Under the pieces are notes generated by a model. The model was given only the letters and a program-made list of their open reading frames with translations. It ran no database searches and was not told the origin of the DNA. The translations under genes were made by a program, and so were the position numbers. This document shows, one piece after another, positions 2,843-53,988 of a stretch of DNA of 64,000 nt (positions are counted from its first letter, which is position 1; the number at the start of each line of letters is the position of its first letter). The stretch covers positions 1 through 64,000 of IMG/VR virus record IMGVR_UViG_3300032307_000369; one strand, 5' to 3'.

Positions 2843-2843
2843 A

Positions 2844-3155: not shown

Positions 3156-3162
3156 ATATAAC

Positions 3163-3244: not shown

Positions 3245-3247
3245 GAT

Positions 3248-3322: not shown

Positions 3323-3328
3323 ATAATT

Positions 3329-37239: not shown

Positions 37240-37785
37240 ATGAGTTTACGGGAAATTACTAAAGATCTACATCACGAAGCAGAAACAACAAAGTTTGCTA
37301 AGATGCTACTAAGTGGTAAAATTGGCAAGGAAGATTACAGAAACTATCTGTATAACTTACTAGCAATTTACGATCCAATTGAGTGGTACTGTAAACGTCA
37401 GGGCTTTCTTACTAACATGCCAGACCTGCCAAGACTCAAGTCTATCTATGCAGATTTTACAGAATTAGATGAGTGCGGATATTACTACCTAACTCCTGCT
37501 ACATTAGAATATCAAACATACTTACATAAACTAGGCAATGATCCAGAACGTAAACATCTTGTTAAGGCGCATTTATATTGCCGCCATATGGGCGACCTAT
37601 TCGGTGGCCAAATCATTAAGAAGCAAGTAGCACATATTTCAAGTGGTAAGTTTTACGACTTTGAAAATGCTGATGCTATGAAGATGGCTATTCGTGAAAC
37701 ACTTACAGATGACTTGGGTGACGAAGCTCGGGTGGCATTTGAATTTGCTATTAAAATGATGCGTGATCTCTATGCCGGAGAGTAA
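37240..37785 (+). CDS. Heme oxygenase (HemO/Ho1-like)
   Basis: L.E.TKDLHH.AE, AHLYCRHMGDLFGGQII, F.FE..D. Confidence 0.92.
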   Translation: MSLREITKDLHHEAETTKFAKMLLSGKIGKEDYRNYLYNLLAIYDPIEWYCKRQGFLTNMPDLPRLKSIYADFTELDECGYYYLTPATLEYQTYLHKLGNDPERKHLVKAHLYCRHMGDLFGGQIIKKQVAHISSGKFYDFENADAMKMAIRETLTDDLGDEARVAFEFAIKMMRDLYAGE

Positions 37786-38458
37786 AGTATGGGACACCCT
37801 AATTGAAATCCAAGCTCTACTTGAGACGTCCTTTGAAAAAACAGGAGTCGAAGTCTTCGAGCCTGGCATGGATCGTTTTAATCAACCTGGTTGGGTTAAT
37901 CGTGTATGGACTAGCGATAAGTATCGTAGGGCCCACGTTGATGTCGTCGATGCTAGGCTAACCAAAGGTCTTTGGATGATGCACTGTTGCATCTTCCCGC
38001 ATACACATAATCCAGCTCCAATTTACGGCTTTGATGTTATTGCTGGTAAGAATAAAATTACTGGCTGTTTCCACGACTATTCAAAAGCAGGTGATCCTAA
38101 TCATCCCATGATGCAGTGGTTTCATGATGAAGTCAGTAAGTTAGAATGGCGCAGAGAGCGAACTTTACCTGAATGGGCCACTAACATTTTTAGTGGTAGC
38201 ATGGTTGCCGCAGGCAATGTACAAGATGAACAAGAACTAGAGCAAATTACTAATCTTGCTAAAACCACTATAGAACACTATCTAAGCACAGTTGCTGATA
38301 CTAACAATACCGTTCCTGATACTACATGGGATCAAAACTACTACGCACAGAATCAAAAATGTAACCCGCATACACCCAGAGTTATGGTTAGTTTAGGGCT
38401 TTCAGAAGATGATGTCAAGCATTTTATACAGGAATGTCTGTTTCCAGAGATTCGATAA
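37772..38458 (+). CDS. Ferredoxin-dependent bilin reductase, PcyX/PcyA family
   Basis: RRAHVDVVD, WMMHCCIFP, PIYGFDVIAG, W...IFS, QKCNPHT; start set to ATG 37772. Confidence 0.88.
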   Translation: MPESKVWDTLIEIQALLETSFEKTGVEVFEPGMDRFNQPGWVNRVWTSDKYRRAHVDVVDARLTKGLWMMHCCIFPHTHNPAPIYGFDVIAGKNKITGCFHDYSKAGDPNHPMMQWFHDEVSKLEWRRERTLPEWATNIFSGSMVAAGNVQDEQELEQITNLAKTTIEHYLSTVADTNNTVPDTTWDQNYYAQNQKCNPHTPRVMVSLGLSEDDVKHFIQECLFPEIR

Positions 38459-38468: not shown

Positions 38469-40280
38469 ATGCGTTTAGATGAATTTCAATTAGCGGGACA
38501 AGTCCCTTCAACTGTACAAAGAGCTGTTCCAGCAACGGCTCAACCCACTGCACAACCAGCAATGTCCACAACGGGCACTGGAGCAACTGAACAAGATGCA
38601 AAAAATGCTCTTATATCTCTTGTAGATAATAGTAAAGATTTGCCACCAGATTCGCCAGTTCATGAATTTGTAAACAAGTTCTTAAATACAATCTTAACTC
38701 ACATACAAGATATACCAGTTCAAGAAGCATCAAAAATGCTTCAGAATATACAAGATGCTAACTCTGAACTTCTTCAAACAATACTGTTAAATCTACAACA
38801 ACTGACCCCAGAAGAATTAGCTATCGTAACTTCAGAAACCTCAGACATTAATGCAAAAGTTGAAGCAGTTAAGAAAATTGCAGATAGACTGTTAAAAACA
38901 AAGCCAGTACAAAAGGCGTTCAATAAACAAGTGGCCACTATTGAATTAGACGTTAAAGGTAATATTGGTAAACTTGACAGCGCAATTGAAAAACGAGCAC
39001 AAAAATTTGCTAGAGATTTTGGACTACCATTGAAGTGGGCTAGAAACTTGATTGGTATGTTTGATGTAAACATTACTAGAGAACAACGTGATGAATTTTT
39101 AGCCGCATGTGAAGCAGGAACTGCTCTAGATGTTGGTCAAATGATACAAGATGGTGAAGGCAAAGTTGAAGATTACGTACTACTAACACAGCCTAAAATT
39201 AAAGAAGTATTTGACAGTGTAAAAGATACTCTATTAGACATTTCATTAAGTACAGGTCAACGTGGTGCCACAGGACCTTTTGAGGCCATGATGGCTATCA
39301 TGGGAGGTTGTAAAAAGCCTGCACCAAATGAGGGCGGAGACCTTAAAACTAAAGATGGCTTAAAACTTGAAGTTAAAGCCACTTCTATTAGTCCAAGTAC
39401 AGAATCTCCAACTTCTGGAGGTAATACTAATGCATGGTTAGATTCTACTGCTGGAAAAGAAATTTCTGGATCTGCATTGAGAAAAGTGGCCAACGAATGG
39501 CTAAGAGATGTTGCTCCTGAAGCGTTAACTGATAAAAAATTCCAAACTGTTTGGAAAAAGGCTGATTTTAGATCAGGTGGGTTATCAAGTCTAAAAGAAG
39601 CACTAATAATGTTGAGAGATTTAGCTTACAAACCAGCTCCTGGCAAAAAGCTAATAACTGCCATGATGGCTGAAATGTATCCGAACATCACAAATCTTCA
39701 AAGTGAAGGTTACGATTTTGATGCCGCTTGTATGAGAATACTGAGTGCTATTGGAAAAAGCACAGGGGACATCAAAGCAGACAAACCATTTAAAGATGCA
39801 ATTGCTAAAGAGCAAGGAGTCATGGGCTTGTTAGAGTATATTAAAGGAAAAGGTAATGACGGATTTGTTTTCTTTAATAGTTCAACACAAAAATTTAAAA
39901 TTGTAATTGGTGTTAAAGGTGTAATTGCAGAGTTAGGTGCTAAAGATTCTAACTTGCACTTTGATGCTCCAATGACCATGGGCGGTTCTGCTAAGGCTAG
40001 TGCAGGCGTATATTATGGTGCAAAACCAGGAAGTCCAGAAGGCCAAGAATACTTGCAAAAATTCAACTCAAGTCCAGAAAGAGTTGAACTATATAGACAA
40101 GTACAACTGGCAAAACAAGCGGCAGCTCAAAACAAATCATTAGCCATGATTGAAGCCGCAAAAGAAGGCTTAACAGAATTTGAGTTTGAAGGTAAAAAAT
40201 ATTCTGTATCTAAAGCCGCTTTAAAGAAATATTTTGAGCCTGACATCCCAATGTCTAGAACCAAAAAGAAAACCCGTTAA
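38469..40280 (+). CDS. Large late protein with PD-(D/E)xK-like motif; possible head-packaged protein
   Basis: ATAAATA 8 nt upstream; MRLDEF N-terminus; GPFE..M....GGDL......LEVK. Confidence 0.6.
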   Translation: MRLDEFQLAGQVPSTVQRAVPATAQPTAQPAMSTTGTGATEQDAKNALISLVDNSKDLPPDSPVHEFVNKFLNTILTHIQDIPVQEASKMLQNIQDANSELLQTILLNLQQLTPEELAIVTSETSDINAKVEAVKKIADRLLKTKPVQKAFNKQVATIELDVKGNIGKLDSAIEKRAQKFARDFGLPLKWARNLIGMFDVNITREQRDEFLAACEAGTALDVGQMIQDGEGKVEDYVLLTQPKIKEVFDSVKDTLLDISLSTGQRGATGPFEAMMAIMGGCKKPAPNEGGDLKTKDGLKLEVKATSISPSTESPTSGGNTNAWLDSTAGKEISGSALRKVANEWLRDVAPEALTDKKFQTVWKKADFRSGGLSSLKEALIMLRDLAYKPAPGKKLITAMMAEMYPNITNLQSEGYDFDAACMRILSAIGKSTGDIKADKPFKDAIAKEQGVMGLLEYIKGKGNDGFVFFNSSTQKFKIVIGVKGVIAELGAKDSNLHFDAPMTMGGSAKASAGVYYGAKPGSPEGQEYLQKFNSSPERVELYRQVQLAKQAAAQNKSLAMIEAAKEGLTEFEFEGKKYSVSKAALKKYFEPDIPMSRTKKKTR

Positions 40281-40331
40281 ACACTAATTCACTAAGCATT
40301 TAATTTGTTGCCAGTTCTCCGTTAAATAATA

Positions 40332-40865
40332 ATGACGGAATTCGGAGAGCGAGCAATGAAAAAACAAATGTATGCCTGTCTTCTATTGGCTTGGGCAAGT
40401 GCTACTCATTCGGCACCATTAGGCGACTTTCAATTTAAAAGTCCAGCATTTAATGGTACTGGGTATAGTTCACATGTACTAACCATAGAAAATCAAGAAC
40501 GTACACGTCAAAAAGAACGTGAAGATAAGGTTCAAGCGGCTTTAGATAAAGCTGCCTCTGAAGCTAAAAACACTAACTTATCAAAATTTCTAAGCAATTT
40601 AGAAAGTAGAATCTACGCACAAATTAGCCAAAACGTAGCAACCGCTATGTTTGCAAATAACGGATGTAGTGTTAGTAGTTCTTCATCATGTCAAGGTTCT
40701 GTAAATTTCCAAGGTAATCAAATATCATGGCAAAGAGTCGCTGATGCATTTAACTGCACAGGCTCATCTAACGGAACTTGTATTCAACTAACAGTTGCAG
40801 ATCCAACAGGCACAACTACTAACATCTATGTGCCGTTAGAATCATTCCAAATGCCAGGGAATTAA
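40332..40865 (+). CDS. csgF: Curli assembly protein CsgF-like
   Basis: Signal peptide, F.SPAFNG, SKFL.NLESRIYAQIS; start may be ATG 40356. Confidence 0.8.
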   Translation: MTEFGERAMKKQMYACLLLAWASATHSAPLGDFQFKSPAFNGTGYSSHVLTIENQERTRQKEREDKVQAALDKAASEAKNTNLSKFLSNLESRIYAQISQNVATAMFANNGCSVSSSSSCQGSVNFQGNQISWQRVADAFNCTGSSNGTCIQLTVADPTGTTTNIYVPLESFQMPGN

Positions 40866-40868
40866 TAT

Positions 40869-42107
40869 ATGAAAAAGACTCTATTATCCCTAGCAATTTT
40901 AAGTATGCTTAGTGGCTGTGCAATATTGCAGTCTACTGGAGAATTTGATAAAACTCCAGAAGTAACAGGTCAAATGAAAGATGTAAAAAAAGAATTTGAC
41001 ACTATTCCTGGACCATCAGCTGGTAGACCACTAAGTGTTGCTGTTTATAGTTTCCAAGATAAAACAGGACAACGTAGACCACAGGCTAATATTGCTAGTT
41101 TATCAACAGCAGTTACACAGGGCGGTGAAACATTCTTAATACAAGCACTACAAAATGTAGGTCGTGGAGAATGGTTTGACGTAGTTGAACGTGTGGGTGT
41201 TGATAATCTAACAAAAGAAAGATTAATAATTCGTCAAATGCGAGAAGCATACGAAGGAAAAGATGCTAAACCATTACTACCAATGCAATTTGCAGGTGTA
41301 ATATTTGAAGGTGGAATCGTGGGCTATGACTCTAGTACAACCAGTGGTGGAGTAGGACAGCGTATTTTTGGTATTGGCAAACAAACTCAATGGTCTACTG
41401 ACAGAGTTACAGTAAGTTTAAGAGCAGTGTCAGTAAACACTGGTAAAGTACTAGCCAGTGTAACTGTACAAAAGACCATTATGAGTTCAGCAGACAGTGT
41501 ATCTGCATTGAAGTTTTTTGATGCTGGAACACAGGCTTTTGAAGCTGAAGCAGGTTTGACTATAAACGAGCCAGGCACTTATGCTGTAAAAGCAACTGTT
41601 GAAATGGCAGTGGTTGAGTTAATTAAAGAAGGTCAACGCAAGGGTGTATGGGATTTTAAGCAAGAGGCTAAACAACCTCCAGCCATGTCTTTCATACCTC
41701 CTACACAGACAGCCCCAGTAATTAGCAGTGAAGTAAAACAAGAAGTTAAAGTTGAGGAGAAAAAAGATGTCGTGGTTCAATCACAAACCCAATCCGAAAC
41801 CAAAACCAAGGCCGTACCCAGTACCGCCACAGAAGTAAAGAATGAAGAACCTAATGCTAATTTACAAGTAACAGCAATGCAAACTGGTGTAAAGCCAACA
41901 GTAGATTTATTTGGAGTTAGATATTTAAAAGAAGATTCATTTGTATATAAAGAAGCAAATGAAAAAAGTCAGCGCACCTGGCTATTGAAGAAAGGTGCTG
42001 AATTATACATTATTACTCCGGGGCCTGAGGGTTGGCACCAAGTAAGAGACGCAAGTAAGCGTAAAGGATTTGTCAAAGATTCAGTGCTCGGAACTGACAA
42101 ACCATAA
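40869..42107 (+). CDS. csgG: CsgG curli secretion channel lipoprotein fused to a C-terminal SH3b-like domain
   Basis: Lipobox LSGC, VAVYSFQDKTGQ, STAVTQG, F.VVER.G.DNLTKER.IIR; C-terminal L.KG......GW..V....KGFV. Confidence 0.92.
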   Translation: MKKTLLSLAILSMLSGCAILQSTGEFDKTPEVTGQMKDVKKEFDTIPGPSAGRPLSVAVYSFQDKTGQRRPQANIASLSTAVTQGGETFLIQALQNVGRGEWFDVVERVGVDNLTKERLIIRQMREAYEGKDAKPLLPMQFAGVIFEGGIVGYDSSTTSGGVGQRIFGIGKQTQWSTDRVTVSLRAVSVNTGKVLASVTVQKTIMSSADSVSALKFFDAGTQAFEAEAGLTINEPGTYAVKATVEMAVVELIKEGQRKGVWDFKQEAKQPPAMSFIPPTQTAPVISSEVKQEVKVEEKKDVVVQSQTQSETKTKAVPSTATEVKNEEPNANLQVTAMQTGVKPTVDLFGVRYLKEDSFVYKEANEKSQRTWLLKKGAELYIITPGPEGWHQVRDASKRKGFVKDSVLGTDKP

Positions 42108-42204
42108 AGATAGCGAGTACGGAGGAATGTCGAAGTAAACTTAATTAACGGCTAATGGCCAAGGAGCGTGATTGGAGAACATATAATCCAATCGTGTATA
42201 GAAG

Positions 42205-43179
42205 ATGGAAAAAAGAAGAACAGGCGGTGGTGGGTTGTCGAGTAAATTACTCACTAGTTTAGTGTTGTCCGCAATGACTACATTGGGCTACGCGGCTGAC
42301 AATAGTATCTATATTGATCAAGCAGGTGATAACAGCACAATTACTATAACACAAGATGGTGCTGGAAATAGAGTAAAAGGTATATTACTTAACGGCACAG
42401 CTGGAGGCACAACTGATCCAGCAAAACTAACAGGCAATGCACAGACAATTAACATTGAACAGACTGGTGCAACCAACGTTTTGGCTGTTGGTGTTAACTC
42501 AACACAAGGTGGTTCAGTTTCTGGATACGCTAACGTGGGTGTGAATTTGAATTACCAAGTGAGTGGTGGTGGTAATACTGGTTATATTAATATTAATAAT
42601 AATGGTCAAGGCACTGCAATTGGTAATGTTGTTAGTGTTGTTCAAAGTGGTGGCGGTGCAACTACTACACTTAACATGACTGGCACAAGTAATCAATTAA
42701 CAGTTGGGCAAAGTGGTGGAGCTAATAACTCATTTACTGGCACAATTAATGCTGACGACACTGTAGCAACTGTGAGTAATACTTTAGGTGGCGGTAACAG
42801 TACAACATTAGACATGACTGGCAATAAAGGTCAAGTTAGTGTTACAACAACTGGTGCTACAAACACAACCAGCGTAACACAAAGTGCATTTGGAACAACT
42901 GGTGCGCAAGTATTAGTTAACATTAACGGTTCTGGCAATGACACAACAATTACACAAAGTGGACTATATGACCATTTTGCTAGTCTAACTGTAGTTGGAA
43001 ACAGTAATGACTTCACTATTGCACAGTCTGGTGGTTCTGCAACTGGACACTCTGCTACAATGACTGTTAATGGAAGTTCAAACGTTGTTGGTGTTACGCA
43101 ACAGGGCTCAGTTTCCAATCTAGTTAACATGGCAGTAAGTGGTGGTAATAATACATACACAATATTACAAAAAAATTAA
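42205..43179 (+). CDS. Curlin-repeat (CsgA/B-like) protein
   Basis: Signal peptide; repeated xNxxxIxQxGxxN strands (NSIYIDQAGDNSTITITQDG ... NNTYTILQKN). Confidence 0.8.
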   Translation: MEKRRTGGGGLSSKLLTSLVLSAMTTLGYAADNSIYIDQAGDNSTITITQDGAGNRVKGILLNGTAGGTTDPAKLTGNAQTINIEQTGATNVLAVGVNSTQGGSVSGYANVGVNLNYQVSGGGNTGYININNNGQGTAIGNVVSVVQSGGGATTTLNMTGTSNQLTVGQSGGANNSFTGTINADDTVATVSNTLGGGNSTTLDMTGNKGQVSVTTTGATNTTSVTQSAFGTTGAQVLVNINGSGNDTTITQSGLYDHFASLTVVGNSNDFTIAQSGGSATGHSATMTVNGSSNVVGVTQQGSVSNLVNMAVSGGNNTYTILQKN

Positions 43180-43188
43180 GAGGTTGGA

Positions 43189-44295
43189 ATGAACGTATGG
43201 AAAGCAATATTACTTGTTTCGTTACTAAACCTGCCAAATGCTCATGCGGCAATTGGTAAAGTAACGGAGCAAGTAAACATACCGCCTACAATTCAACGAG
43301 ACAAATCAACTTTGACTGGTAGTAAAGGCACTGGCGTTGAAATGAATGACGCTATTCAAACCAAAGCAGGCAAAGTAGGAATTACATTTCAAGACGATAC
43401 TAGAGTACAAGTAAACGAAAATTCAAAATTAGTCATAGACGACTTCGTCTATGATGCAAAAAGCAAAAGTGGTAAACTTGGTGCTAAAATTGCACTGGGC
43501 ACAGTTCGTTACGCTAGCGGACAAATTGCTAAAAATAGTCCACAGAACGTAAACCTAAATACACCCAGTGCCACAGTGGCAGTACGTGGCACTGACTTTA
43601 CAGCCACAGTAGATGAATTAGGTGAATCAACTATTATTTTGCTACCTAGTTGTCCTAATGATAGACCAATGCGTACAGTGAGAGATATTGAAGCGGGTTG
43701 TAAAACAGGTGTGATTGAAGTTAGTAATGACGTAGGTACTGTAGTATTGAATCAGCCATTCCAAGTGACTAAGGTACAAAGCAGAACACAACCGCCTACT
43801 CCTCCAAAAACATTAGAGTTATCAGAAATGGCCATTAGTAACTTGTTAATTATAAGTCCTCCAAAGGAAGTTAAACAAGCACAAGAAGAACAACGCAAAA
43901 TGTTTAATCCATTAGACATAGATTTCTTAAAAGAAAAAGGATTAGAAAATTGGCTTGACATGCAGGCTGGTATTATTTACGAAGACAAGTTAAAGAAAAA
44001 CTTTTTAGACAATGATTTTTTAGCAAGTTTGTTTGAGATTATTGGTAATGAATTAGATCAAAAATTCTTAGATCCTGTGGATCCTGTATTACCTGATTAC
44101 AAAAGAGCAAGCGGTATAGTTGCCTATAAAGATGATACCAGTGTTGAATTGTGTAGAGATAACGGAGCTGATATACAGTGTGTTAGAACTCCACTTACAC
44201 AAAATTCAACTATCTATCAACACCAAGGTAGTTTAGAATTTAAGAATAGAATTAATCAGGGCGGCAACACTACCATTACGCTGATACAACGATGA
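43189..44295 (+). CDS. FecR-domain secreted protein
   Basis: D.IQT......ITF.D.T.V.V.ENS.LVID.F, G.VRYASG, TPSATVAVRGTDF. Confidence 0.85.
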   Translation: MNVWKAILLVSLLNLPNAHAAIGKVTEQVNIPPTIQRDKSTLTGSKGTGVEMNDAIQTKAGKVGITFQDDTRVQVNENSKLVIDDFVYDAKSKSGKLGAKIALGTVRYASGQIAKNSPQNVNLNTPSATVAVRGTDFTATVDELGESTIILLPSCPNDRPMRTVRDIEAGCKTGVIEVSNDVGTVVLNQPFQVTKVQSRTQPPTPPKTLELSEMAISNLLIISPPKEVKQAQEEQRKMFNPLDIDFLKEKGLENWLDMQAGIIYEDKLKKNFLDNDFLASLFEIIGNELDQKFLDPVDPVLPDYKRASGIVAYKDDTSVELCRDNGADIQCVRTPLTQNSTIYQHQGSLEFKNRINQGGNTTITLIQR

Positions 44296-46019
44296 AAAAA
44301 TTTCTAATATTTCTATTTTTTGTTTGTTCAAATTCTTTTGCGGCTATCACTGACGGCAAGTTTGGTATCAATCAAATATTTGATGTGCAATACTGGTGGA
44401 ATGGTACAACCCTAAACGCCAGTAATTTCATTGCTCCTTATGACAAAAACTTTCAAACTGTAACTGCTACTACGGGACAATACTTCCAATTTTTTAATAG
44501 TACAACTAATCCTGGCAAACACGGATTAAAACTAATGAATAGTAATGGCACACAGGCAAGAATTATACACGACTACGGCGACATAACTGCCTTAGGTAAC
44601 GGTGCTATTTTCTATATTGGTAGTGGATTTTTTGGTAATGTTATTTCTACAGCACAGGGTTATAACTACGGTGCTAGTGCATCATTCACTAACATGGACA
44701 CAAGTGTTACTAGTACTGATTTAAACAACTATACGTTTGCAAGTACAACTCCGTTGGCTGCTGGACAAACTGCGGCACCCGCTGGTCCTGCTCCTACTGC
44801 TATCTATATGAACAATGCTACTGTAAAAATTACACGAGCAATACCAACCACAAGCAATAGTCCACCAGGTGAAGGTCCTAACAATGCGTTTGATAATAAC
44901 TCTGGCACAAAGTACCTAAACTTTGATAAAAAAAATGCAGGCGTTACTGTGCAGTTAAACACAGGTCGAGTAGTAACTGGGTTCACAGTTACAACAGCCA
45001 ACGACTTTAGTGGACGTGATCCTACTAGTTATAAATTGTATGGTAGTAATGATGGATCAACTTGGGTGTTAATCAAACAAGACACTATCACATTAAGTGA
45101 CAATAGATTTACAACTAGTTCAGTTATTAATGTAGGCAATACTACAGCTTATGCATATTACTTTATGTTGTTTCCAACAACCAAAGCAGGTGATGGTTGT
45201 GGCTTAAATTGTGATAGTATGCAAATAGCTGAACTAACATATTACTATGATTCTAATAGTACAGTAACTAGTACAGCCACAAGCTCTACCATTGTTGACC
45301 CTGTAAATGGTGCTAGTCCTTCAGTACAAGGCGGTACCATAACACAATCAAATGCTCCTACTAACCAAATTATAGGAAGTGGTGGCGGCAGTGTTAATAT
45401 TACTGCTGGTCAACAAAGTCGTGTGAATAATTGGAACAAAGGTTTAAATCAAATCCCAAATAATTATTTGTATATTGATCAAGTAAGCGGCAACTTTAAT
45501 AATGTAACCATTACACAAACCACTACTACAGGCAAAAATAGAATAGAAGCAACACTGAGTGGCACTGGTAGTAACACTGTCAACGCCACACAATCTGGCA
45601 CCAACTACTTCAATTTGAATATTGGTGGTGCTAACAATAATATGACTAGCCAGCAGTCCAACAATAGTTCAACTAGTAACTATAAAGAAACTACAATTAC
45701 TGGTAATAATAATATTATCAATACTAACCAAAAAGACAATGCTAATCATTTGATGTTCACTACAGTAACAGGGAACAGTAACAATGTGAACGCAGTACAA
45801 GAAGGTACAGGCGGACATTATTTAGAAAATAAACTTACAGGAAATGGGCATACAGTTCTTGTAAATCAAAATGGAAACACTGCCAACAATGCTAGGATTG
45901 ATTTAACCAATAGCGGAGGTGCTGGCAGTGTGGATTTACAACAGTCTGGTGGGAAATCTTTTACTATTATTCAAAGCTGTACTAACCCAGCTGGGTGTAG
46001 CACAGTTGTAAGACAATAA
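44292..46019 (+). CDS. Curlin-repeat protein with internal discoidin (F5/8 type C)-like domain
   Basis: Signal peptide; NAFDNN..TKYL, TANDF..RDP..Y.LYGSNDG..W; C-terminal N/Q-rich curlin-like strands. Confidence 0.75.
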   Translation: MKKFLIFLFFVCSNSFAAITDGKFGINQIFDVQYWWNGTTLNASNFIAPYDKNFQTVTATTGQYFQFFNSTTNPGKHGLKLMNSNGTQARIIHDYGDITALGNGAIFYIGSGFFGNVISTAQGYNYGASASFTNMDTSVTSTDLNNYTFASTTPLAAGQTAAPAGPAPTAIYMNNATVKITRAIPTTSNSPPGEGPNNAFDNNSGTKYLNFDKKNAGVTVQLNTGRVVTGFTVTTANDFSGRDPTSYKLYGSNDGSTWVLIKQDTITLSDNRFTTSSVINVGNTTAYAYYFMLFPTTKAGDGCGLNCDSMQIAELTYYYDSNSTVTSTATSSTIVDPVNGASPSVQGGTITQSNAPTNQIIGSGGGSVNITAGQQSRVNNWNKGLNQIPNNYLYIDQVSGNFNNVTITQTTTTGKNRIEATLSGTGSNTVNATQSGTNYFNLNIGGANNNMTSQQSNNSSTSNYKETTITGNNNIINTNQKDNANHLMFTTVTGNSNNVNAVQEGTGGHYLENKLTGNGHTVLVNQNGNTANNARIDLTNSGGAGSVDLQQSGGKSFTIIQSCTNPAGCSTVVRQ

Positions 46020-46709
46020 TTAAGACTTAAACAAATATCGTTTATGTAAATGTAATCGAGCCTTGTTATACTGTACAAATGTTATAACAAGAGCAACTGC
46101 CCAAGGCACAATAGCCGCGGCCCATGGAACAAGTCCTGCCCACCATGCAGCCATCAATGGTTCTTTCATTAGCATTAACATAGCAACAGCAAACAGTACA
46201 AACGAGCCTACAAATACTGTGTCAGGCCAACGCTGTAAAATCTTGCTGACCATAGTAGCACCAAACAAAATAATTGGCACTGAGATTAATAGTCCAGCAA
46301 TAATAAGAACAAAGTTTCCGTTAGCGGCTGCGGCAATACCTAGTGCATTGTCTATACCCATAACAGCGTCAGCAACTACAATAGTTGAAATTGCACCCCA
46401 GAATGTGTCCTTGGCTTCAATGTTGTGTTCACCGTGGTCAAACACTAGTTTCCAACCAATCCATATCAATGCGGCAGCACCTATAGCACGTAAGCCTGGA
46501 ATCATCAGTAGGTACGTTAATGCCGCAACACTTACAAAACGTATAGCGATAGCACCAAAGGTACCCCAAAAGATTGCCTTCTTGCGTAAGTGATCTGGTA
46601 ATTTATTAGCCGCCATTCCAATAACAAGAGCGTTATCACCAGCTAATACAATATCTATCAAAATGATAGCTAAAAAAGCCCAAAGGGCTTGAAGCGTAAA
46701 GAGTTCCAT
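46020..46709 (-). CDS. TerC/YjbE family membrane protein
   Basis: IDIVLAGDNALVIGMAA, AI..IVVADAVMGIDNALGIA. Confidence 0.92.
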   Translation of the reverse strand: MELFTLQALWAFLAIILIDIVLAGDNALVIGMAANKLPDHLRKKAIFWGTFGAIAIRFVSVAALTYLLMIPGLRAIGAAALIWIGWKLVFDHGEHNIEAKDTFWGAISTIVVADAVMGIDNALGIAAAANGNFVLIIAGLLISVPIILFGATMVSKILQRWPDTVFVGSFVLFAVAMLMLMKEPLMAAWWAGLVPWAAAIVPWAVALVITFVQYNKARLHLHKRYLFKS

Positions 46710-46835
46710 ACTTTTCCTTGAAATTTATGGTCTCACTTCTTTGTCTATATACCGGGCTTTCTAGCCGTGTTGACGATATATAAAGCCAACCCATGTCGGC
46801 TAGTTACTCCCCAAAAATATTTAGTTAAATACATG

Positions 46836-47372
46836 ATGCGAGCAAAAGAATTTATACTAGAAGCAGAAGCCAGTGATACTGAGTTAAAACAACGTTGGGG
46901 TGACTTTTCTCCAGAAGACAAGCCTATGCTTCCACAAACACGAGTTGGAGGTGCTCCTGCACCCACACTATGGACAGCATACAGTGTTATCCAAAACATT
47001 TTAGGTCGAAATCGAGTAACTGATGACGATGACGAACTAGAGCCTGGAATGTACTATGTTTATCAAAGTAATGAATCTCCAATGTTTAAGGATACCGGAG
47101 ACGGAGTTGGTAGTATAAATTTACCTAATTTAGATAGCACTGCGGCACGTGACGTTGCCACGGCAGCACACGAAGCTTACCATGCTTATGTACACAATAA
47201 GAGTCAGGGTGGCTTTGCTCATGCTAACGAAAAAATTATTAACAACCTAGCAGAAAAATGGTTAAGAAATCATTTATCTGGACCAGCTTTACATGTCGCA
47301 CTTGAAACAATAGTGGGCAGTAAAATTAGTTATGGTCCAAACCATATGCCTAAACCAGGAACTAAAAAATGA
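46836..47372 (+). CDS. Late protein with HExxH motif; possible head-packaged protein
   Basis: TTAAATA immediately upstream; MRAKEFILE N-terminus; AAHEAYH; start reset from 46767. Confidence 0.6.
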   Translation: MRAKEFILEAEASDTELKQRWGDFSPEDKPMLPQTRVGGAPAPTLWTAYSVIQNILGRNRVTDDDDELEPGMYYVYQSNESPMFKDTGDGVGSINLPNLDSTAARDVATAAHEAYHAYVHNKSQGGFAHANEKIINNLAEKWLRNHLSGPALHVALETIVGSKISYGPNHMPKPGTKK

Positions 47373-49414
47373 ATATTAAAAAAATATTATTAAGCCCTTG
47401 GACTGCCTTACTAACTCTAGCATTAGTAGTAGGTATACGTATAGCAGATCCTACATTTGTTGAAAGTGTAAGACTACGCTACTTTGACACGTTAATTACT
47501 GCCAAAGAACCAACTTTTAACAACATCGTAACTGTAAATATTGATGAAGCGAGTTTAGACAAATATGGACAATGGCCGTTGCCTCGTGCTGAGTATTCCC
47601 GACTTGTACGAGATTTATATCAGAGGGGAGCAGGGCTTGTTGTACTTAATGTGCTCATGCCAGAACCAGACCGTACAGGTGGCGACAATTCGCTGGGTCA
47701 AACTTTAAAAGAATTTCCTGTAGTACTAGGGTCAGTACCTAGTAATAAAACAAAAAATACACCAAGAGTTCCAGGCAGTGCAGTGCTAGGGCCAGAACAT
47801 TTAGATCAAATTATTCAATATCCTGGACTTATAGCCAACGTTCCGCAGTTAGAAAACTCAGCGGCTGGTGTAGGAATAGTATCAACACTACCTGAAGTAG
47901 ACGGTGTTAATCGTAGACTACCTCTTATCGTTACTGTTGACGGTAAACTTTATCCAAGCATAGCTATGGAAACACTCCGCGTTGCGGCTGGCGATAGCAC
48001 TTTTCAAGTAAAACTATTTGAAGGTGGTGTTGAAAAAATGCGTATACCTACATTTGGTCCTGTTACTACAGACAACTTAGGTCGTATATGGATTGATTGG
48101 AGCCAACAAAATCGTAGCTTCAGTTTAACCACATTACCAAAAGATTTAGAGGGAGCCATTGTTATTGTTGGTCCAACGGCTGCTGGCATTGGTAATCCAG
48201 TACCAACAAGTAAGGGCGCAGTATGGCCACATGAAGTACAAGCCGCAGTTATAGGCACTATGGTAAACGGTGTTGTTATTCAACGTCCTGATTATGCAGA
48301 CGGTGCTGAAATTATAGCGTTGTTGGCTTTTGGTTTACTATTAATTTTATTGTCAAGGTGGACTTATGTTGGAATTATTTCTACTGTGGTTATTATTGGT
48401 GCCGTCGTTCCTGGTACTTTCTACGCTTTCAATAATTGGCTCATCTTGGGAGACGCGACTGCGATCTCGTTTGGCCTTATTATCATTGCTCTTCATACTT
48501 ACGGCGTTAAGTTTGTAAGTGAGTTCTTACAGAAACAGGCAATTAAGAAACAGTTTGAAGGATATGCAAGTCCTACAGTAGTTAAACTGTTACAGGAAAA
48601 TCCAGACATCATCAAGAACGGAACAAAGCGTGAAGTTTCTATTGTATTTTCAGACTTACGTGGCTTCACACCCTTAGGTGAAAGTTTTGGTGATGATGTT
48701 AAAGGTCTAACAGAAGTTATGAATGGCTACATGGATGCTATCACACAACCTGTACTAGATGCAGATGGCATGATTATCAAGTATATTGGTGATGCAAGTA
48801 TGCACATACACAATGCTCCTATTGATGATCCGCATCATGCTAAAACAGCCGTGGCTACAGGACTTAAGATGTTAAAGGCTGTTAAACAGTTTAGTATTGA
48901 GTTGGAAGCTAAAGGTCGTCCAGGTGTTAAGATGGGTGCTGGCATCAATACTGGACTAGGCTATATTGGCGAAATGGGTTCAACCAAGCGTCATTCATAT
49001 GATGTCTTAGGTGATGCAGTGTCAACTGCCGCACGTATTGAAAGCAAATGTAAAGAGTACGGCTGTGTATTACTGGTTGGGGGTGCTACTGTAGAACAAT
49101 GCGGTGATGATTTCTTCTTCTTAAAAGTAGACGACCTAGCTGTTAAGGGTAAGAGTGTTGGGGTTGCTATCTATACAGTGTTAGATGATGTCACTGCTGA
49201 ATATCATGTGGCTAAAAAGATACATGATGCCATGCATAGTGCGTATAGATCACAAAAATTTAGCACAGCTATCAATATGTGCAAACAACTTAGAGATCAA
49301 TTTGACGGAAGATTGAGCGGCTACTACGATATGTGGATAGAACGCTGTGAGTTTCAGTTAACACAAACGTTACCAAAAGATTGGAACGGCGTGTTTATAG
49401 CAACTTCAAAATAA
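47369..49414 (+). CDS. CHASE2-domain class III adenylate cyclase
   Basis: IDE.SL..YGQWP.PR, CHASE2 plus 3 TM; VFSDLRGFT, KYIGDA, YDVLGDAVSTAARIE. Confidence 0.93.
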   Translation: MNIKKILLSPWTALLTLALVVGIRIADPTFVESVRLRYFDTLITAKEPTFNNIVTVNIDEASLDKYGQWPLPRAEYSRLVRDLYQRGAGLVVLNVLMPEPDRTGGDNSLGQTLKEFPVVLGSVPSNKTKNTPRVPGSAVLGPEHLDQIIQYPGLIANVPQLENSAAGVGIVSTLPEVDGVNRRLPLIVTVDGKLYPSIAMETLRVAAGDSTFQVKLFEGGVEKMRIPTFGPVTTDNLGRIWIDWSQQNRSFSLTTLPKDLEGAIVIVGPTAAGIGNPVPTSKGAVWPHEVQAAVIGTMVNGVVIQRPDYADGAEIIALLAFGLLLILLSRWTYVGIISTVVIIGAVVPGTFYAFNNWLILGDATAISFGLIIIALHTYGVKFVSEFLQKQAIKKQFEGYASPTVVKLLQENPDIIKNGTKREVSIVFSDLRGFTPLGESFGDDVKGLTEVMNGYMDAITQPVLDADGMIIKYIGDASMHIHNAPIDDPHHAKTAVATGLKMLKAVKQFSIELEAKGRPGVKMGAGINTGLGYIGEMGSTKRHSYDVLGDAVSTAARIESKCKEYGCVLLVGGATVEQCGDDFFFLKVDDLAVKGKSVGVAIYTVLDDVTAEYHVAKKIHDAMHSAYRSQKFSTAINMCKQLRDQFDGRLSGYYDMWIERCEFQLTQTLPKDWNGVFIATSK

Positions 49415-49816
49415 TTAACCTTCTCCTGCTGCCGCAGTTTTTACGTCATCAGGATCAATATCATCTCTACGTTTGATTGTTTTAGGTTGCTCTTTCTTAT
49501 CAGCATGTGTTACGGCTTCGTTAAACTTTTCAGCGGCTTCACGCTCAACTTTAACACCTTCCATAACACGTTCTGATTCGATCATCTTACCGCGTAAGTG
49601 CAACACAGTATTGACCTTTTGATTCAAACGAATCAAGTCGTTATCCAACATACGAATACGGTCTATAAGAGCAATAAGAACTGTGTTGGCTTCTGAGATA
49701 ACTGGCTTGACTTCTTTTGTTGACCATTCCCATACATACTTAATAATGTAGCCCATTCCAACTGCCATGACAATTGGAAAGCCATATTTGTTTACTAATT
49801 CTACTATCTCAGTCAT
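49415..49816 (-). CDS. YvrJ/BhlA-like TM coiled-coil protein
   Basis: LVNKYGFPIV..GY; paralog of 50178-50459. Confidence 0.65.
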   Translation of the reverse strand: MTEIVELVNKYGFPIVMAVGMGYIIKYVWEWSTKEVKPVISEANTVLIALIDRIRMLDNDLIRLNQKVNTVLHLRGKMIESERVMEGVKVEREAAEKFNEAVTHADKKEQPKTIKRRDDIDPDDVKTAAAGEG

Positions 49817-49830: not shown

Positions 49831-49989
49831 TCAAACAGCAAGACCAATTAAAAATCCTATTAATGCGCCAAACAATCCTGCTCTCCACATGTCACTATCG
49901 TACCAAATAGCCTTTGGCTGATCAATCCAACGCTGTATATGCTCTGGTTGAGCTTCGTACCACACGTCCCATTTATTCTTTTTGAACAT
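49831..49989 (-). CDS. 52-aa membrane peptide (MFKKNKWDVWYEAQPEH...)
   Basis: Translated by hand; C-terminal TM helix. Confidence 0.55.
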   Translation of the reverse strand: MFKKNKWDVWYEAQPEHIQRWIDQPKAIWYDSDMWRAGLFGALIGFLIGLAV

Positions 49990-50170
49990 TTGGTTTATAT
50001 CCTCTAGTAAATGCTTCTATTGGTTCTATTTTTTGTAATATCTGTCTACCATTAATATTAACAAATCTAAACAGATCCCCATTTTTCCAACCTAACCTAT
50101 CACTATTAAATTCTTCATCAAGGATTATTCCATTTGAAGAACAATCCCAATTATAATCAATGTACAACAT
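49973..50170 (-). CDS. Hypothetical phage protein
   Basis: ORF track; IILDEE.....LGWK.GD.F pattern. Confidence 0.6.
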   Translation of the reverse strand: MLYIDYNWDCSSNGIILDEEFNSDRLGWKNGDLFRFVNINGRQILQKIEPIEAFTRGYKPNVQKE

Positions 50171-50177
50171 TTACTGC

Positions 50178-50459
50178 TTAATCCCTTCTAGCATCATTCT
50201 TACCGTCTGCTCGACTAATACGCTCCACATCTGGTTTCAAACCCAATGCATTACTTACCACAGTGTCAATACGGATAACGTCATGGTTCATGGTTTTAAC
50301 ACGATTGTCCAAAGCTACAATAATTCCAGCCATACCTTTGATACTGCCCAAAACACCCTGCAATAGTAGTTTGATTGTCAAGTACACAAAGTATCCGCCT
50401 GCAAAAGCAACTGCAATTGGGAACCCTAGATCACCAATTATTTTAAAAATTTCGTTCAT
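50178..50459 (-). CDS. YvrJ/BhlA-like TM coiled-coil protein
   Basis: IIGDLGFPIA..GYF; paralog of 49415-49816. Confidence 0.65.
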   Translation of the reverse strand: MNEIFKIIGDLGFPIAVAFAGGYFVYLTIKLLLQGVLGSIKGMAGIIVALDNRVKTMNHDVIRIDTVVSNALGLKPDVERISRADGKNDARRD

Positions 50460-50780: not shown

Positions 50781-50855
50781 CTGGCGATAGTTCAACGGAT
50801 AGAACAGTAGCCTTCTAAGCTATTAATCCAGGTTCGATTCCTGGTCGCCGGACCA
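50781..50855 (+). tRNA. tRNA-Arg(TCT), second copy
   Basis: CTGGCGA/TCGCCGG, anticodon arm GTAGC-ctTCTaa-GCTAT, CCA. Confidence 0.94.
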
Positions 50856-53760: not shown

Positions 53761-53845
53761 GCCTGCATGGTGAAATAGGTAAACACAGCAGACTTAAAAT
53801 CTGCCGGAGAAATCCTTCCCAGTTCGATTCTGGGTGCAGGCACCA
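53761..53845 (+). tRNA. tRNA-Leu(TAA)
   Basis: GCCTGCA/TGCAGGC, anticodon arm GCAGA-ctTAAaa-TCTGC, CCA. Confidence 0.94.
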
Positions 53846-53904: not shown

Positions 53905-53988
53905 GCGACTGTGGTGGAATGGTATACACAGCAGACTTAAAATCTGCCGCCGCAAGGATTGAGGGTTCGAGTCTCTCCAGTCGTACCA
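53905..53988 (+). tRNA. tRNA-Leu(TAA), second copy
   Basis: GCGACTG/CAGTCGT, same anticodon arm as 53761-53845, CCA. Confidence 0.94.

What the first reader, a model, noticed from the sequence alone, without database searches (positions are those of the whole stretch)
40332..49414. Phage curli-like secretion/fibre cassette coupled to FecR and a CHASE2 adenylate cyclase
Seen: late-type promoter, then csgF, csgG, curlin-repeat protein, FecR-domain protein and a curlin-discoidin protein, followed by TerC and a membrane CHASE2 class III cyclase. No CsgE or CsgD is visible. Established: CsgG/CsgF export and nucleate CsgA/B amyloid at the outer membrane; FecR domains and CHASE2 cyclases mediate trans-envelope signalling; csgG/csgF-like genes have been noted in some phages, to my recollection. 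Inference: the infected cell builds a glycan-binding amyloid-like surface fibre (aggregation, grazing defence or superinfection exclusion) whose state may be signalled through FecR and CHASE2 to cAMP.
Basis: partly seen in the sequence, partly recalled or inferred. Interest (0 to 1): 0.8.

Follow-up and report, generated by a model that had tools for sequence, protein, structure and literature searches.

The report
Phage curli secretion module with sensor cyclase
A 245-kb freshwater jumbo phage carries a complete curli-type (type VIII) secretion and fibre cassette joined to a FecR-like periplasmic protein and a CHASE2 adenylate cyclase; this module is already published for marine pelagiphages, so this is a new member, and its function is still untested.

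Summary
The gene calls are correct. Window 40356-49414 encodes CsgF, lipoprotein CsgG (with an SH3-like tail), a curlin-repeat subunit, a secreted FecR-domain protein, a second fibre protein with a discoidin/CBM32 head, and a CHASE2 class III adenylate cyclase.

TerC (minus strand) and a 201-aa ORF are cargo in a variable slot, not module parts.

The module is not new. It is annotated in Pelagibacter phage HTVC008M and Methylophilales phage Melnitz. Wittmers et al. 2022 (PMC9599517) describe it in full, including FecR and the cyclase.

In 79 IMG/VR loci, FecR follows the first fibre gene in 60/60 informative loci and the cyclase is present in 41/45.

What this work adds:
- The window phage is a freshwater jumbo phage with no cultured relative.
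- All five envelope proteins carry Sec signals, so they are not virion parts.
- The FecR protein ends in a conserved curlin-like strand within a small beta-domain resembling an adhesin retention module.
- FecR-domain/CHASE2 pairs are a general bacterial sensor couple.
- FecR-containing T8SS clusters, one with an orthologous CHASE2 cyclase nearby, exist on contigs with cellular gene content.
- A TAAATA motif is conserved upstream of csgF.

Fibre formation, FecR-CHASE2 contact and cAMP output are inferred, not shown.

The parts
40322..40333 (+). Conserved promoter-like element TTAAATAATAAT. It shares the 3' six bases of the T4 late promoter TATAAATA.
   Evidence: This is the only TAAATAHTAAT in the window. 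A TAAATA core lies 15-40 nt upstream of csgF in 25/27 non-redundant related loci. It is not the canonical late promoter.
40356..40865 (+). CsgF homologue (the ORF as listed starts at 40332; 40356 is the likely true start)
   Evidence: Pfam CsgF E 2.2e-7. It has a signal peptide. The family profile retrieves only E. coli CsgF from the PDB (E 0.34), aligned at the mature N-terminal F-x-F-[KR]-[NS]-P-x-F-x-G segment. F27, P30, F32 and G34 are invariant.
40869..42107 (+). CsgG outer-membrane lipoprotein channel with a C-terminal linker and SH3-like domain (41691-42107)
   Evidence: Pfam CsgG E 1.5e-45. E. coli CsgG 3X2R matches at E 2e-43 over the whole mature protein. The lipobox is LSG|C. SH3_4 matches at E 9e-5. 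The extension is present in 27/79 loci. The E. coli constriction residues are not conserved.
42205..43179 (+). Curlin-repeat fibre subunit 1 (Cur1)
   Evidence: Pfam Curlin_rpt E 5.5e-6. The best PDB matches are solved curli subunits: 8C50 (E 1.4e-6) and CsgA 8ENQ (E 0.036). It has a signal peptide and six x-I-x-Q-x-G-x-x-N repeats. It follows csgG in every locus that extends far enough.
43189..44295 (+). Secreted FecR-domain protein: an N-terminal FecR/PupR-like domain, a flexible linker, and a small C-terminal beta-domain ending in a curlin-like strand
   Evidence: Pfam FecR. The AlphaFold model has pLDDT 74. Foldseek matches 4M0N and 6OVK for the N-domain and 5IX9 for the C-domain. The tail matches the terminal Cur1 repeat by hhalign with E 4.3e-5, above all 100 shuffles. 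It is present in 60/60 loci.
44292..46019 (+). Fibre subunit 2 (Cur2): signal peptide, discoidin/CBM32 lectin domain (about 44847-45191), and C-terminal curlin-like strand ladder (about 45462-46019)
   Evidence: Pfam F5_F8_type_C E 1.5e-11. Foldseek matches CBM32 galactose-binding modules 3NNG, 7BLG and 2V72. AlphaFold gives a strand ladder with pLDDT 78-91. The head is variable: PA14 in HTVC008M and L090/L095, none in Melnitz.
46020..46709 (-). TerC-family membrane protein; cargo in the variable slot, not a module component
   Evidence: Pfam TerC E 4.8e-40. It is on the opposite strand and occurs only in the window and L023.
46767..47372 (+). 201-aa ORF (likely start 46833) with a HEAYH motif and no export signal; its end overlaps the cyclase start
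   Evidence: It has no Pfam, PHROG or PADLOC hit. Homologues occur in L005-L008. The protein Atlas gives only viral hypothetical proteins.
47369..49414 (+). CHASE2 class III adenylate cyclase: TM1, periplasmic CHASE2, three TM helices, cytoplasmic catalytic domain
   Evidence: Pfam CHASE2 E 1.8e-39 and Guanylate_cyc E 2.7e-18. The metal Asp residues, Lys/Asp specificity pair and Arg are present, with Asn replaced by Ser. It is present in 41/45 loci. It aligns end to end with the L097 cyclase.
49415..49816 (-). Conserved flanking gene (phrog_18771; N-terminal TM segment, weak holin-like match)
   Evidence: It flanks the module in nearly all loci, often as a tandem pair. It sits upstream on the plus strand in pelagimyophage-like loci and downstream on the minus strand in window-like loci, which is consistent with one inversion of the module.

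Best explanation
This is a phage-borne, self-contained FecR-type type VIII (curli) secretion module, derived from a cellular system.

Proposed mechanism. During infection the Sec system exports five proteins. CsgG (a lipoprotein) forms the outer-membrane channel and CsgF caps it through its conserved N-terminal peptide. Cur1, a curlin-type beta-solenoid subunit, passes through and polymerises on the cell surface. Cur2 adds a fibre-compatible solenoid carrying a lineage-variable lectin head (discoidin/CBM32 here, PA14 elsewhere), making the fibre adhesive for glycans.

The FecR-domain protein is an integral accessory of this T8SS variant. Its C-terminal small beta-domain ends in a curlin-like strand, which docks it to subunits, the fibre base or the pore. 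Its N-terminal FecR/PupR-like domain stays in the periplasm and contacts the CHASE2 domain of the inner-membrane cyclase. In this way secretion or fibre state is converted into cytoplasmic cAMP.

Shown: gene content, homology, export signals, topology, catalytic residues, co-conservation, and counterparts on contigs with cellular gene content.

Inferred: fibre assembly, glycan binding, FecR-CHASE2 contact, cAMP output, and the biological pay-off (adhesion or aggregation of infected cells, or exclusion of competing phages).
For: Domain calls. CsgG matches E. coli CsgG at E 2e-43 and has a lipobox. The CsgF N-terminal motif is conserved. Cur1 matches solved curli subunits 8C50 and 8ENQ. Cur2 has a CBM32-like head and a strand ladder. 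All five envelope proteins have signal peptides and the cytoplasmic controls do not.

Synteny in 79 IMG/VR loci: FecR 60/60, cyclase 41/45, with 40 on the same strand. The order is the same in the isolates Melnitz and HTVC008M.

FecR protein: the tail resembles the terminal curlin repeat (hhalign 20.7 against a shuffle maximum of 15.8). 77/93 family representatives end in phi-x-phi-x-Q, against 10.8% of background ORFs. The N-domain resembles PupR/anti-sigma periplasmic domains and the C-domain resembles the MpIBP retention module 5IX9 (bioRxiv 10.1101/198937).

FecR/CHASE2 pairs in unrelated bacteria: Acidobacteria, FecR-OmpA followed by CHASE2-HD-GYP; Burkholderia and Pseudomonas, LysM-FecR with a CHASE2 kinase (PMC5192318); S. 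meliloti, SMc02177 beside CyaD1 (PMC5498481). CHASE2 cyclases relay an extracellular protein signal via an outer-membrane barrel to cAMP (PMC13001267).

Counterparts with cellular gene content. The cyclase keeps its metal, Lys/Asp and Arg residues. Wittmers et al. report expression of the marine homologues in metatranscriptomes (PMC9599517).
Against: There is no experimental evidence for fibres. Melnitz-infected OM43 cultures showed no clumping (PMC9004378).

The E. coli CsgG constriction residues (Y51/N55/F56) are not conserved, so the pore may behave differently.

The cyclase is missing from 4/45 loci. It is separated from FecR by a 0.6-5.2 kb slot of unrelated cargo. The bacterial-type loci P0164 and L096 have kinases rather than a CHASE2 cyclase next to the T8SS.

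The catalytic Asn is Ser in this lineage.

The match to 5IX9 is weak by E-value (0.029). The solenoid of Cur2 did not retrieve solved curli by Foldseek or phmmer.

No RNA run was listed for this phage.
Confidence: 0.6

Rival explanations
1. The T8SS part, including the FecR protein, makes fibres, but the FecR protein is purely a secretion or assembly factor: a functional stand-in for the missing CsgE adaptor or a CsgB-like nucleator or anchor. On this view the CHASE2 cyclase is an independent auxiliary gene that shares the same hypervariable island, with no signalling link between them.
For: FecR is universal (60/60) while the cyclase is not (41/45). Up to 5 kb of unrelated cargo (TerC, epimerases, GT2) separates them. 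Bacterial-type T8SS-FecR clusters occur without an adjacent CHASE2 cyclase. The curlin-like tail and retention-module-like C-domain speak to an assembly role.
Against: FecR-domain proteins sit next to CHASE2 sensors in unrelated bacteria that have no T8SS (PMC5192318; PMC5498481). The cyclase is kept on the same strand downstream in 40/45 loci across very divergent phages. An orthologous cyclase lies near the bacterial-type cluster in L097.
Confidence: 0.22
2. The CsgG/CsgF pair has been repurposed as a gated outer-membrane pore for lysis timing (pinholin- or secretin-like) or for uptake of solutes. The repeat proteins would not form functional fibres (the Buchholz et al. proposal).
For: No clumping was seen in Melnitz infections, and altered pore charge was modelled (PMC9004378). 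The constriction residues differ from E. coli. A holin-like small membrane protein always flanks the module. CsgE is absent.
Against: One or two Sec-exported curlin-type subunits are conserved in every locus that extends far enough. Cur1 matches solved curli. The lectin heads on Cur2 make sense only for a surface-exposed product. The CsgF peptide needed for nucleation-competent pores is invariant. Alphaproteobacterial curli operons also lack CsgE according to PMC9599517. The flanking gene's adjacency is explained by a single inversion.
Confidence: 0.12
3. The repeat proteins are virion fibres or tail-fibre parts, and the cassette is structural.
For: The proteins are repeat-rich and beta-strand-rich with lectin-like heads, which resembles receptor-binding proteins. 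In pelagimyophages the module abuts baseplate genes.
Against: Both repeat proteins have cleavable Sec signal peptides, so they leave the cytoplasm where virions assemble. There are no structural PHROG hits. They are always embedded between CsgG and the cyclase. The same proteins occur in bacterial-type T8SS clusters.
Confidence: 0.03

Closest known systems
Pelagiphage T8SS (curli) module: Zaragoza-Solas 2020 (PMC7029224), Buchholz 2022 (PMC9004378), Wittmers 2022 (PMC9599517); isolates HTVC008M and Melnitz
   Same: The gene order is the same: CsgF-CsgG-curlin-FecR-second curlin-adenylate cyclase. Protein identity to the window is 35-50%. There is no CsgE, CsgC or CsgD.
   Different: The window phage is a 245-kb freshwater/subsurface jumbo phage whose rIIA is at most 32% identical to any isolate. 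The freshwater SAR11 myophages were reported to lack the operon (PMC7029224). Here CsgG carries an SH3-like C-terminal domain, Cur2 carries a discoidin head, and TerC plus a 201-aa ORF are inserted before the cyclase. There is no histidine kinase upstream, unlike the podophage version.
Bacterial curli system of E. coli/Salmonella (csgBAC-csgDEFG)
   Same: It shares the CsgG lipoprotein channel (E 2e-43), CsgF with its conserved N-terminal CsgG-binding peptide, and curlin-repeat subunits exported by Sec.
   Different: CsgE, CsgC and CsgD are absent. The constriction residues are not conserved. The subunits are larger (324 and 575 aa), and one has a lectin head. A FecR-domain protein and a sensor enzyme are added.
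FecR-containing T8SS clusters on contigs with cellular gene content (GCA_041447055.1 contig; loci L096-L098), probably alphaproteobacterial
   Same: They have CsgF-CsgG-curlin-FecR-curlin-like ORF in the same order. The FecR protein has the same curlin-like tail. L097 also has a full-length orthologous CHASE2 cyclase 3.6 kb away.
   Different: GC is 57-60% against 38%. They lie in housekeeping or IS-element context. The neighbouring sensors are histidine kinases, response regulators and an EAL protein, or a cyclase on the opposite strand. No lectin head was seen.
FecR-domain protein plus CHASE2 sensor pairs of bacteria (Burkholderia/Pseudomonas LysM-FecR + CHASE2 kinase; S. meliloti SMc02177 + CyaD1; Acidobacteria FecR-OmpA + CHASE2-HD-GYP)
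   Same: A signal-peptide FecR-domain protein is encoded next to a membrane CHASE2 sensor with an enzymatic output (PMC5192318; PMC5498481).
   Different: In those pairs the FecR protein carries a peptidoglycan anchor (LysM or OmpA-like). In the phage it carries a curlin-like tail. Those pairs are not linked to a T8SS.
FecR/PupR anti-sigma factors of iron cell-surface signalling
   Same: The fold of the periplasmic domain is shared (Foldseek 6OVK and 4M0N, E about 1e-4).
   Different: There is no cytoplasmic anti-sigma domain, no transmembrane helix, no ECF sigma factor and no TonB-dependent transducer nearby. The iron-regulator label is not supported.

Membership tests
Type VIII secretion (curli) system | CsgG outer-membrane lipoprotein channel | tested here: met
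   Pfam CsgG E 1.5e-45. E. coli CsgG 3X2R matches at E 2e-43 over residues 7-269. The lipobox is LSG|C.
Type VIII secretion (curli) system | CsgG constriction residues as in E. coli (Y51/N55/F56) | tested here: not met
   The alignment to 3X2R shows E. coli 'pyp-asnfstav' against window 'pqaniaslstav'. The aromatic and Asn residues are replaced. This is a difference in pore lining, not a universal family criterion.
Type VIII secretion (curli) system | CsgF with an N-terminal peptide that inserts into CsgG | tested here: met
   Pfam CsgF scores 31.5 bits, above the cut-off of 25.8. The family profile finds only E. coli CsgF in the PDB (weak, E 0.34), aligned at the F-x-F-[KR]-[NS]-P-x-F-x-G motif, whose core is invariant in 25 sequences.
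Type VIII secretion (curli) system | Sec-exported subunits made of curlin repeats | tested here: met
   Cur1: Pfam Curlin_rpt E 5.5e-6, PDB curli subunits 8C50 E 1.4e-6 and 8ENQ E 0.036, signal peptide. Cur2: profile cross-hits and a strand ladder only, with no significant PDB curli match.
Type VIII secretion (curli) system | Subunits form extracellular amyloid fibres | not testable with these tools
   This needs expression with Congo red/ThT and EM. No clumping was seen for Melnitz (PMC9004378).
Type VIII secretion (curli) system | CsgE, CsgC and CsgD accessory and regulatory genes | tested here: not met
   None was found among the ORFs scanned at 37.2-49.8 kb. According to PMC9599517 these genes are also absent from alphaproteobacterial operons, so they do not define the wider family.
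CHASE2 sensor proteins | TM helix, periplasmic CHASE2 domain, three TM helices, cytoplasmic output domain | tested here: met
   Pfam CHASE2 E 1.8e-39 over residues 16-324. Hydrophobic segments start at residues 3, 309, 325 and 356.
Class III adenylate cyclase | Two metal-binding Asp residues, a Lys/Asp (or Thr) adenine-specifying pair, and a transition-state Arg | tested here: met
   Alignment to Cya2 2W01/6FHT and CyaB 3R5G. The residues are conserved in 48 family members.
Class III adenylate cyclase | Transition-state Asn (VNxAxR) | tested here: not met
   The residue is Ser in the window (AVSTAAR) and in 37 of 48 relatives. It covaries with Asp at the specificity position. The other 11 have Thr or Ser plus Asn. 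Activity is untested.
FecR anti-sigma factor (FecIRA cell-surface signalling) | Cytoplasmic anti-sigma domain, single TM helix and periplasmic FecR domain, with a cognate ECF sigma factor and a TonB-dependent transducer | tested here: not met
   Only the periplasmic domain is present, behind a cleavable signal peptide. No sigma factor or TonB-dependent receptor was found among neighbouring ORFs.
Pycsar (PycC) anti-phage cyclase systems | Pyrimidine cyclase paired with a cNMP-binding effector | tested here: not met
   PADLOC PycC hits (at most 54.6 bits) are weaker than the generic cyclase model. The Lys/Asp pair indicates ATP. No module protein matches an effector.

The most novel reading that the evidence does not exclude
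The FecR-domain protein is a trans-envelope tether. Its curlin-like C-terminal strand is built into the base of the fibre, or lodged in the CsgG pore in the manner of an adhesin retention module. Its FecR domain stays in the periplasm, bound to the CHASE2 domain. Attachment of the lectin-tipped fibre to another cell or particle, or a secretion jam, would then be transmitted mechanically to the cyclase, and cAMP would tell the infected cell and the phage programme (for example the timing of lysis) that contact has been made. This would be a general, previously unrecognised function of FecR/CHASE2 pairs: monitoring an envelope structure through an anchor domain (LysM, OmpA-like or curlin-like).
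Probability: 0.15. Interest if true: 0.8.

Novelty: new member of a known kind. Interest (0 to 1): 0.45.

Why it matters
Phage-encoded curli systems are abundant. At least 571 IMG/VR contigs encode a CsgG relative, and the FecR family has more than 6,800 proteins in the public collection. What they do is still unknown. This window shows that the module is not confined to marine SAR11/OM43 phages: it also sits in freshwater jumbo phages, where it carries swappable lectin heads.

The analysis also reframes two components. The so-called iron regulator FecR is better read as a T8SS-integrated docking protein with a curlin-like tail. The adenylate cyclase is a CHASE2 receptor of a type that in bacteria is habitually partnered with FecR-domain proteins. 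That gives concrete, testable interactions: FecR tail with fibre or pore, and FecR head with CHASE2. It also suggests what ligand-orphan CHASE2 sensors may monitor.

Tried and rejected
1. Megablast of the cassette against deposited phages found nothing. Protein-level search was needed.
2. The canonical T4 late promoter and sigma-70/terminator scans gave no signal above shuffles.
3. The genome-contig scan with the FecR alignment gave only 6 loci. Four were phage contigs mis-binned into MAGs of four different phyla, so they are not evidence of bacterial origin.
4. No RNA-seq run was listed. Laying contigs confirmed the assembly in the probable source sample. It showed near-identical pieces in an independent subsurface sample, and only weak hints that the TerC segment is variable (a depth hole in X3, and a joint with a 26-nt side).
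5. The Pycsar defence reading of the cyclase was rejected.
6. The 264-aa ORF of the bacterial-type clusters is not homologous to the ~272-aa phage slot ORFs, which are NAD-dependent sugar epimerases/dehydratases.
7. The loci without a cyclase show no replacement histidine kinase within 10 kb.
8. Foldseek and phmmer on the Cur2 solenoid did not retrieve solved curli.
9. The upstream 603-aa protein is an orphan absent from all other loci, so it is not part of the module.
10. The Atlas search on the 201-aa ORF gave only viral hypothetical proteins.

Full report
**What is in the window.**
The window belongs to IMGVR_UViG_3300032307_000369, a 245,550-bp viral contig. Its GC content is about 38%. 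It carries a block of 16 tRNA genes plus three more, rIIA, radical-SAM proteins and a DnaK homologue. No deposited phage shares nucleotide similarity with the cassette. The window's rIIA is at most 32% identical to any isolate, the best being PA5oct-like jumbo phages. Public runs that hold the sequence are freshwater, lake and subsurface metagenomes. The element is therefore an uncultured freshwater jumbo phage.

**Check of the observation.**
- CsgF, 40332-40865
- CsgG, 40869-42107, with a weak C-terminal SH3_4 match that is firmer when the tail is scanned alone
- a Curlin_rpt protein, 42205-43179
- a FecR-domain protein, 43189-44295
- an F5/8-type-C (discoidin) protein, 44292-46019
- TerC, 46020-46709
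- a CHASE2 plus class III cyclase protein, 47369-49414

Four corrections apply:
- TerC is on the minus strand.
- A 201-aa ORF with a HEAYH motif (46767-47372) overlaps the cyclase start and was not mentioned.
- The real CsgF start is probably the ATG at 40356. It follows a GGAGAG site and begins a signal peptide.
- The "late-type promoter" is not the canonical TATAAATA, and generic promoter and terminator scans are at chance.

There is nonetheless a conserved element. A TAAATA core, usually [G/T]TAAATA[C/A/T]TAAT, lies 15-40 nt upstream of csgF in 25 of 27 non-redundant related phage loci. The extended motif occurs exactly once in the 64-kb window, at 40323-40333. Its positional conservation, rather than its frequency, argues that it is a promoter-like signal sharing the 3' six bases of the T4 late promoter.

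**It is a known module.**
tblastn finds the CsgG and cyclase genes a few kb apart in Methylophilales phage Melnitz and Pelagibacter phage HTVC008M. Their records annotate CsgF, CsgG, a curlin-repeat protein, a FecR-domain or hypothetical protein, a second curlin or hypothetical protein, and an adenylate/guanylate cyclase, in the same order. PHROGs already holds families for CsgF, CsgG, the FecR protein and the full-length cyclase. Three papers cover the module:
- Zaragoza-Solas et al. 2020 reported the curli genes in pelagimyophages and proposed "sibling capture".
- Buchholz et al. 2022 proposed a lysis-timing pore and saw no clumping in culture.
- Wittmers et al. 2022 described the whole module, including FecR and the cyclase, in myo- and podo-pelagiphages. 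They reported its expression in metatranscriptomes, proposed aggregation, superinfection defence or import, and inferred an alphaproteobacterial origin.

None of these papers mentions CHASE2.

**Co-conservation.**
At least 571 IMG/VR contigs encode a CsgG relative, and I analysed the best 80. I built profiles from the three phages' proteins and used them on the 79 other loci:
- Every locus that extends far enough has a curlin subunit after csgG.
- FecR is present in 60 of 60 loci with at least 3.6 kb downstream.
- The cyclase is present in 41 of 45 loci with at least 9.5 kb downstream, 40 of them on the same strand.

Between FecR and the cyclase lies a variable slot of 0.6-5.2 kb. It holds zero to two further curlin-type genes and unrelated cargo:
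- TerC occurs only in the window and L023.
- The 201-aa ORF occurs in the window and L005-L008.
- Elsewhere the slot holds NAD-dependent sugar epimerases/dehydratases, a family-2 glycosyltransferase and a metallophosphatase.

The four loci lacking the cyclase show no replacement kinase. One of them carries an autotransporter and a phosphate porin instead. The FecR family exceeds 6,800 proteins in the large collection, on contigs of up to 373 kb. It forms about 186 clusters at 50% identity.

**The proteins.**
CsgG aligns with E. coli CsgG over the whole mature protein (E 2e-43) and has a lipobox. The E. coli constriction residues are replaced. The SH3-like C-terminal extension is found in 27 of 79 loci.

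The CsgF family keeps an invariant F-x-F-[KR]-[NS]-P-x-F-x-G segment at the mature N-terminus. The only PDB sequences its profile retrieves are E. coli CsgF, weakly (E 0.34), and aligned at that segment. From my own knowledge of the CsgG-CsgF structures, that segment is the part that inserts into the CsgG barrel.

Cur1 matches solved curli subunits: 8C50 at E 1.4e-6 and CsgA 8ENQ at E 0.036.

For Cur2, the AlphaFold model is poor overall (pLDDT 59). It is confident for residues 390-575, which form a regular ladder of short strands. Foldseek matches the head to F5/8-type-C/CBM32 galactose-binding modules. The head is lineage-variable: PA14 in HTVC008M, L090 and L095, none in Melnitz, and unrecognised in many others.

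CsgF, CsgG, Cur1, FecR and Cur2 all begin with signal sequences, whereas cytoplasmic controls from the same window do not. This excludes a virion role for the repeat proteins.

**The cyclase.**
Its topology is TM1, a periplasmic CHASE2 domain, three TM helices and a cytoplasmic catalytic domain. Alignment to Cya2 and CyaB shows both metal Asp residues, the adenine-specifying Lys and Asp, and the Arg. The transition-state Asn is Ser. Across 48 relatives two covarying classes exist: Asp with Ser (37 sequences, including the window and Melnitz) and Thr or Ser with Asn (11, including HTVC008M). The PycC hits in PADLOC reflect only the shared fold.

**The FecR protein.**
It is not a FecR anti-sigma factor, because it has only a signal peptide and the periplasmic domain. 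The AlphaFold model (44-sequence alignment, pLDDT 74) has three parts:
- a confident N-terminal beta-domain (residues 23-200)
- a low-confidence helical linker
- a confident six-stranded C-terminal domain (residues 305-368)

Foldseek matches the N-domain to periplasmic domains of anti-sigma regulators (4M0N, and PupR 6OVK). It matches the C-domain to 5IX9 (TM 0.73 normalised to the target, rmsd 1.3 Å, 25% identity, E 0.029). 5IX9 is the MpIBP retention module, which is proposed to anchor an adhesin in its outer-membrane pore.

The last ~30 residues are conserved across the family and align in register with the terminal repeat of Cur1. The hhalign score is 20.7 (E 4.3e-5), against a mean of 8.5 and a maximum of 15.8 for 100 column shuffles, and 7.6 for the reversed control. 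Of 93 full-length family representatives, 77 end in phi-x-phi-x-Q, against 10.8% of background ORFs.

**Bacterial context.**
Two genuine acidobacterial contigs encode a FecR protein carrying an OmpA-like peptidoglycan-binding domain, followed by a CHASE2-HD-GYP protein. They have no T8SS. The literature adds LysM-FecR plus CHASE2 kinase operons in Burkholderiales and Pseudomonas. It also adds SMc02177 (FecR domain) beside the CHASE2 cyclase CyaD1 in S. meliloti. There, CHASE2 cyclases respond to an extracellular protein through the outer-membrane barrel NsrA. FecR-domain proteins with an envelope anchor therefore look like habitual partners of CHASE2 sensors.

Separately, FecR-type T8SS clusters exist on contigs with cellular gene content:
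- P0164 lies on a 345-kb contig of assembly GCA_041447055.1 among RNase E/G, Maf, InfA and YacG. Its order is dCache kinase, CsgF, CsgG, curlin, FecR, 215-aa ORF, preceded by an HWE kinase, response regulators and an EAL protein.
- L096 (57% GC) has the same T8SS-FecR unit next to a kinase, response regulators and an EAL protein.
- L097 and L098 (about 60% GC) have it flanked by IS21.
- L097 also carries a CHASE2 cyclase 3.6 kb upstream. It aligns end to end with the window's cyclase (30% identity, E 2e-98), including the shared extreme C-terminus.

This qualifies the statement in PMC9599517 that FecR, the kinase and the cyclase are not within bacterial T8SS operons. It agrees with that paper's inferred cellular origin. 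The organisms were not named by the tools. An alphaproteobacterial assignment is my inference from the HWE_HK and UPF0262 families.

**Interpretation.**
The best-supported reading is a phage-borne FecR-type T8SS. It decorates the infected cell with a curlin fibre bearing a swappable lectin head. The FecR protein links pore, subunits or fibre to a periplasmic sensor enzyme, here a CHASE2 adenylate cyclase. Homology, export signals, topology, conservation and counterparts with cellular gene content are shown. Fibre assembly, glycan binding, FecR-CHASE2 contact, cAMP output and the ecological role are inferred.

The main rival keeps the fibre but denies the signalling link. It has real support from the 4/45 loci without a cyclase, from the cargo-filled slot, and from bacterial-type clusters that use kinases instead. 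The pore-only and virion readings are weaker.

**Verdict.**
The increments found here are:
- the freshwater jumbo-phage host range
- the CsgG-SH3 and discoidin fusions
- the curlin-like, retention-module-like FecR tail
- the CHASE2 identity and its general pairing with FecR-domain proteins
- the FecR-type T8SS clusters on contigs with cellular gene content
- the cyclase active-site covariation
- the conserved TAAATA element

Noticed in passing
window 376-3414 (minus strand); also 50781-50855, 53761-53845 and 53905-53988: There is a block of 16 tRNA genes with different anticodons, plus three more tRNAs (Arg-tct and two Leu-taa) downstream of the module.
   Followed up: no
window 34490-36379; also L064 5166-7088, L070 4793-6694, L095 247-2112: The phage encodes a full-length DnaK/Hsp70 (about 66-68% identical to cellular-type DnaK in database records). 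Its position upstream of the T8SS module is conserved in related phages. L095 adds HSP20 and ClpS.
   Followed up: partly
window 37240-37785 and 37763-38458: An overlapping heme oxygenase and ferredoxin-dependent bilin reductase pair is conserved just upstream of the module throughout the window-like clade. The phage comes from freshwater and subsurface samples and its host is unknown.
   Followed up: partly
window 46767-47372 (likely start 46833); L005-L008: This 201-aa ORF has a HEAYH (HExxH-like) motif and no export signal. Its stop overlaps the cyclase start codon. It has no family match, and the Atlas gives only viral hypothetical proteins plus a faint Peptidase_M78 lead.
   Followed up: partly
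window 49415-49816 (minus) and about 49973-50459; equivalents in nearly all loci: A small protein with an N-terminal TM segment (phrog_18771, weak holin-like N-terminus), often as a tandem pair, always abuts the module. It is upstream on the same strand in pelagimyophage-like loci and downstream on the opposite strand in window-like loci, as expected from one inversion of the whole module.
   Followed up: partly
window 48990-49040 (cyclase motif); 48 homologues in the loci: The cyclase active site comes in two covarying forms, Asp with Ser (YD[VI]LGDxVSxAxR) and Thr or Ser with Asn (Y[TS]xxGDxVNLxxR). This suggests a compensated change at the ribose and base pocket.
   Followed up: yes
L083-L086 (genome contigs): Four short contigs binned into MAGs labelled Rhodobacteraceae, Legionellales, Flavobacteriaceae and Pirellulales carry the whole phage module plus the phage-specific flanking genes. 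They are almost certainly mis-binned phage DNA.
   Followed up: yes
L070 15267-18979; L095 14843-16456; L042, L054 and L058 slot ORFs: Related phages carry other envelope-remodelling cargo beside the module: an autotransporter beta-domain protein, a phosphate-selective porin, a family-2 glycosyltransferase, a metallophosphatase and NAD-dependent sugar epimerases/dehydratases.
   Followed up: partly
window 38469-40280: A 603-aa soluble protein directly upstream of csgF has no homologue in any of the 79 related loci and no family match beyond a sub-threshold Prominin hit.
   Followed up: partly
window 9663-10685 and 14850-15932 (minus strand): Two radical-SAM proteins (phrog_1802) lie in a long minus-strand gene cluster of otherwise unmatched proteins.
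   Followed up: no
window 46134-46521 in runs X3 and X2: Contigs from a related sample (X3) cover the flanks but give zero depth over TerC. One X2 contig joins 44309 to 47543, with only a 26-nt side. These are weak hints that relatives in nature lack the Cur2-TerC-ORF201 segment.
   Followed up: partly
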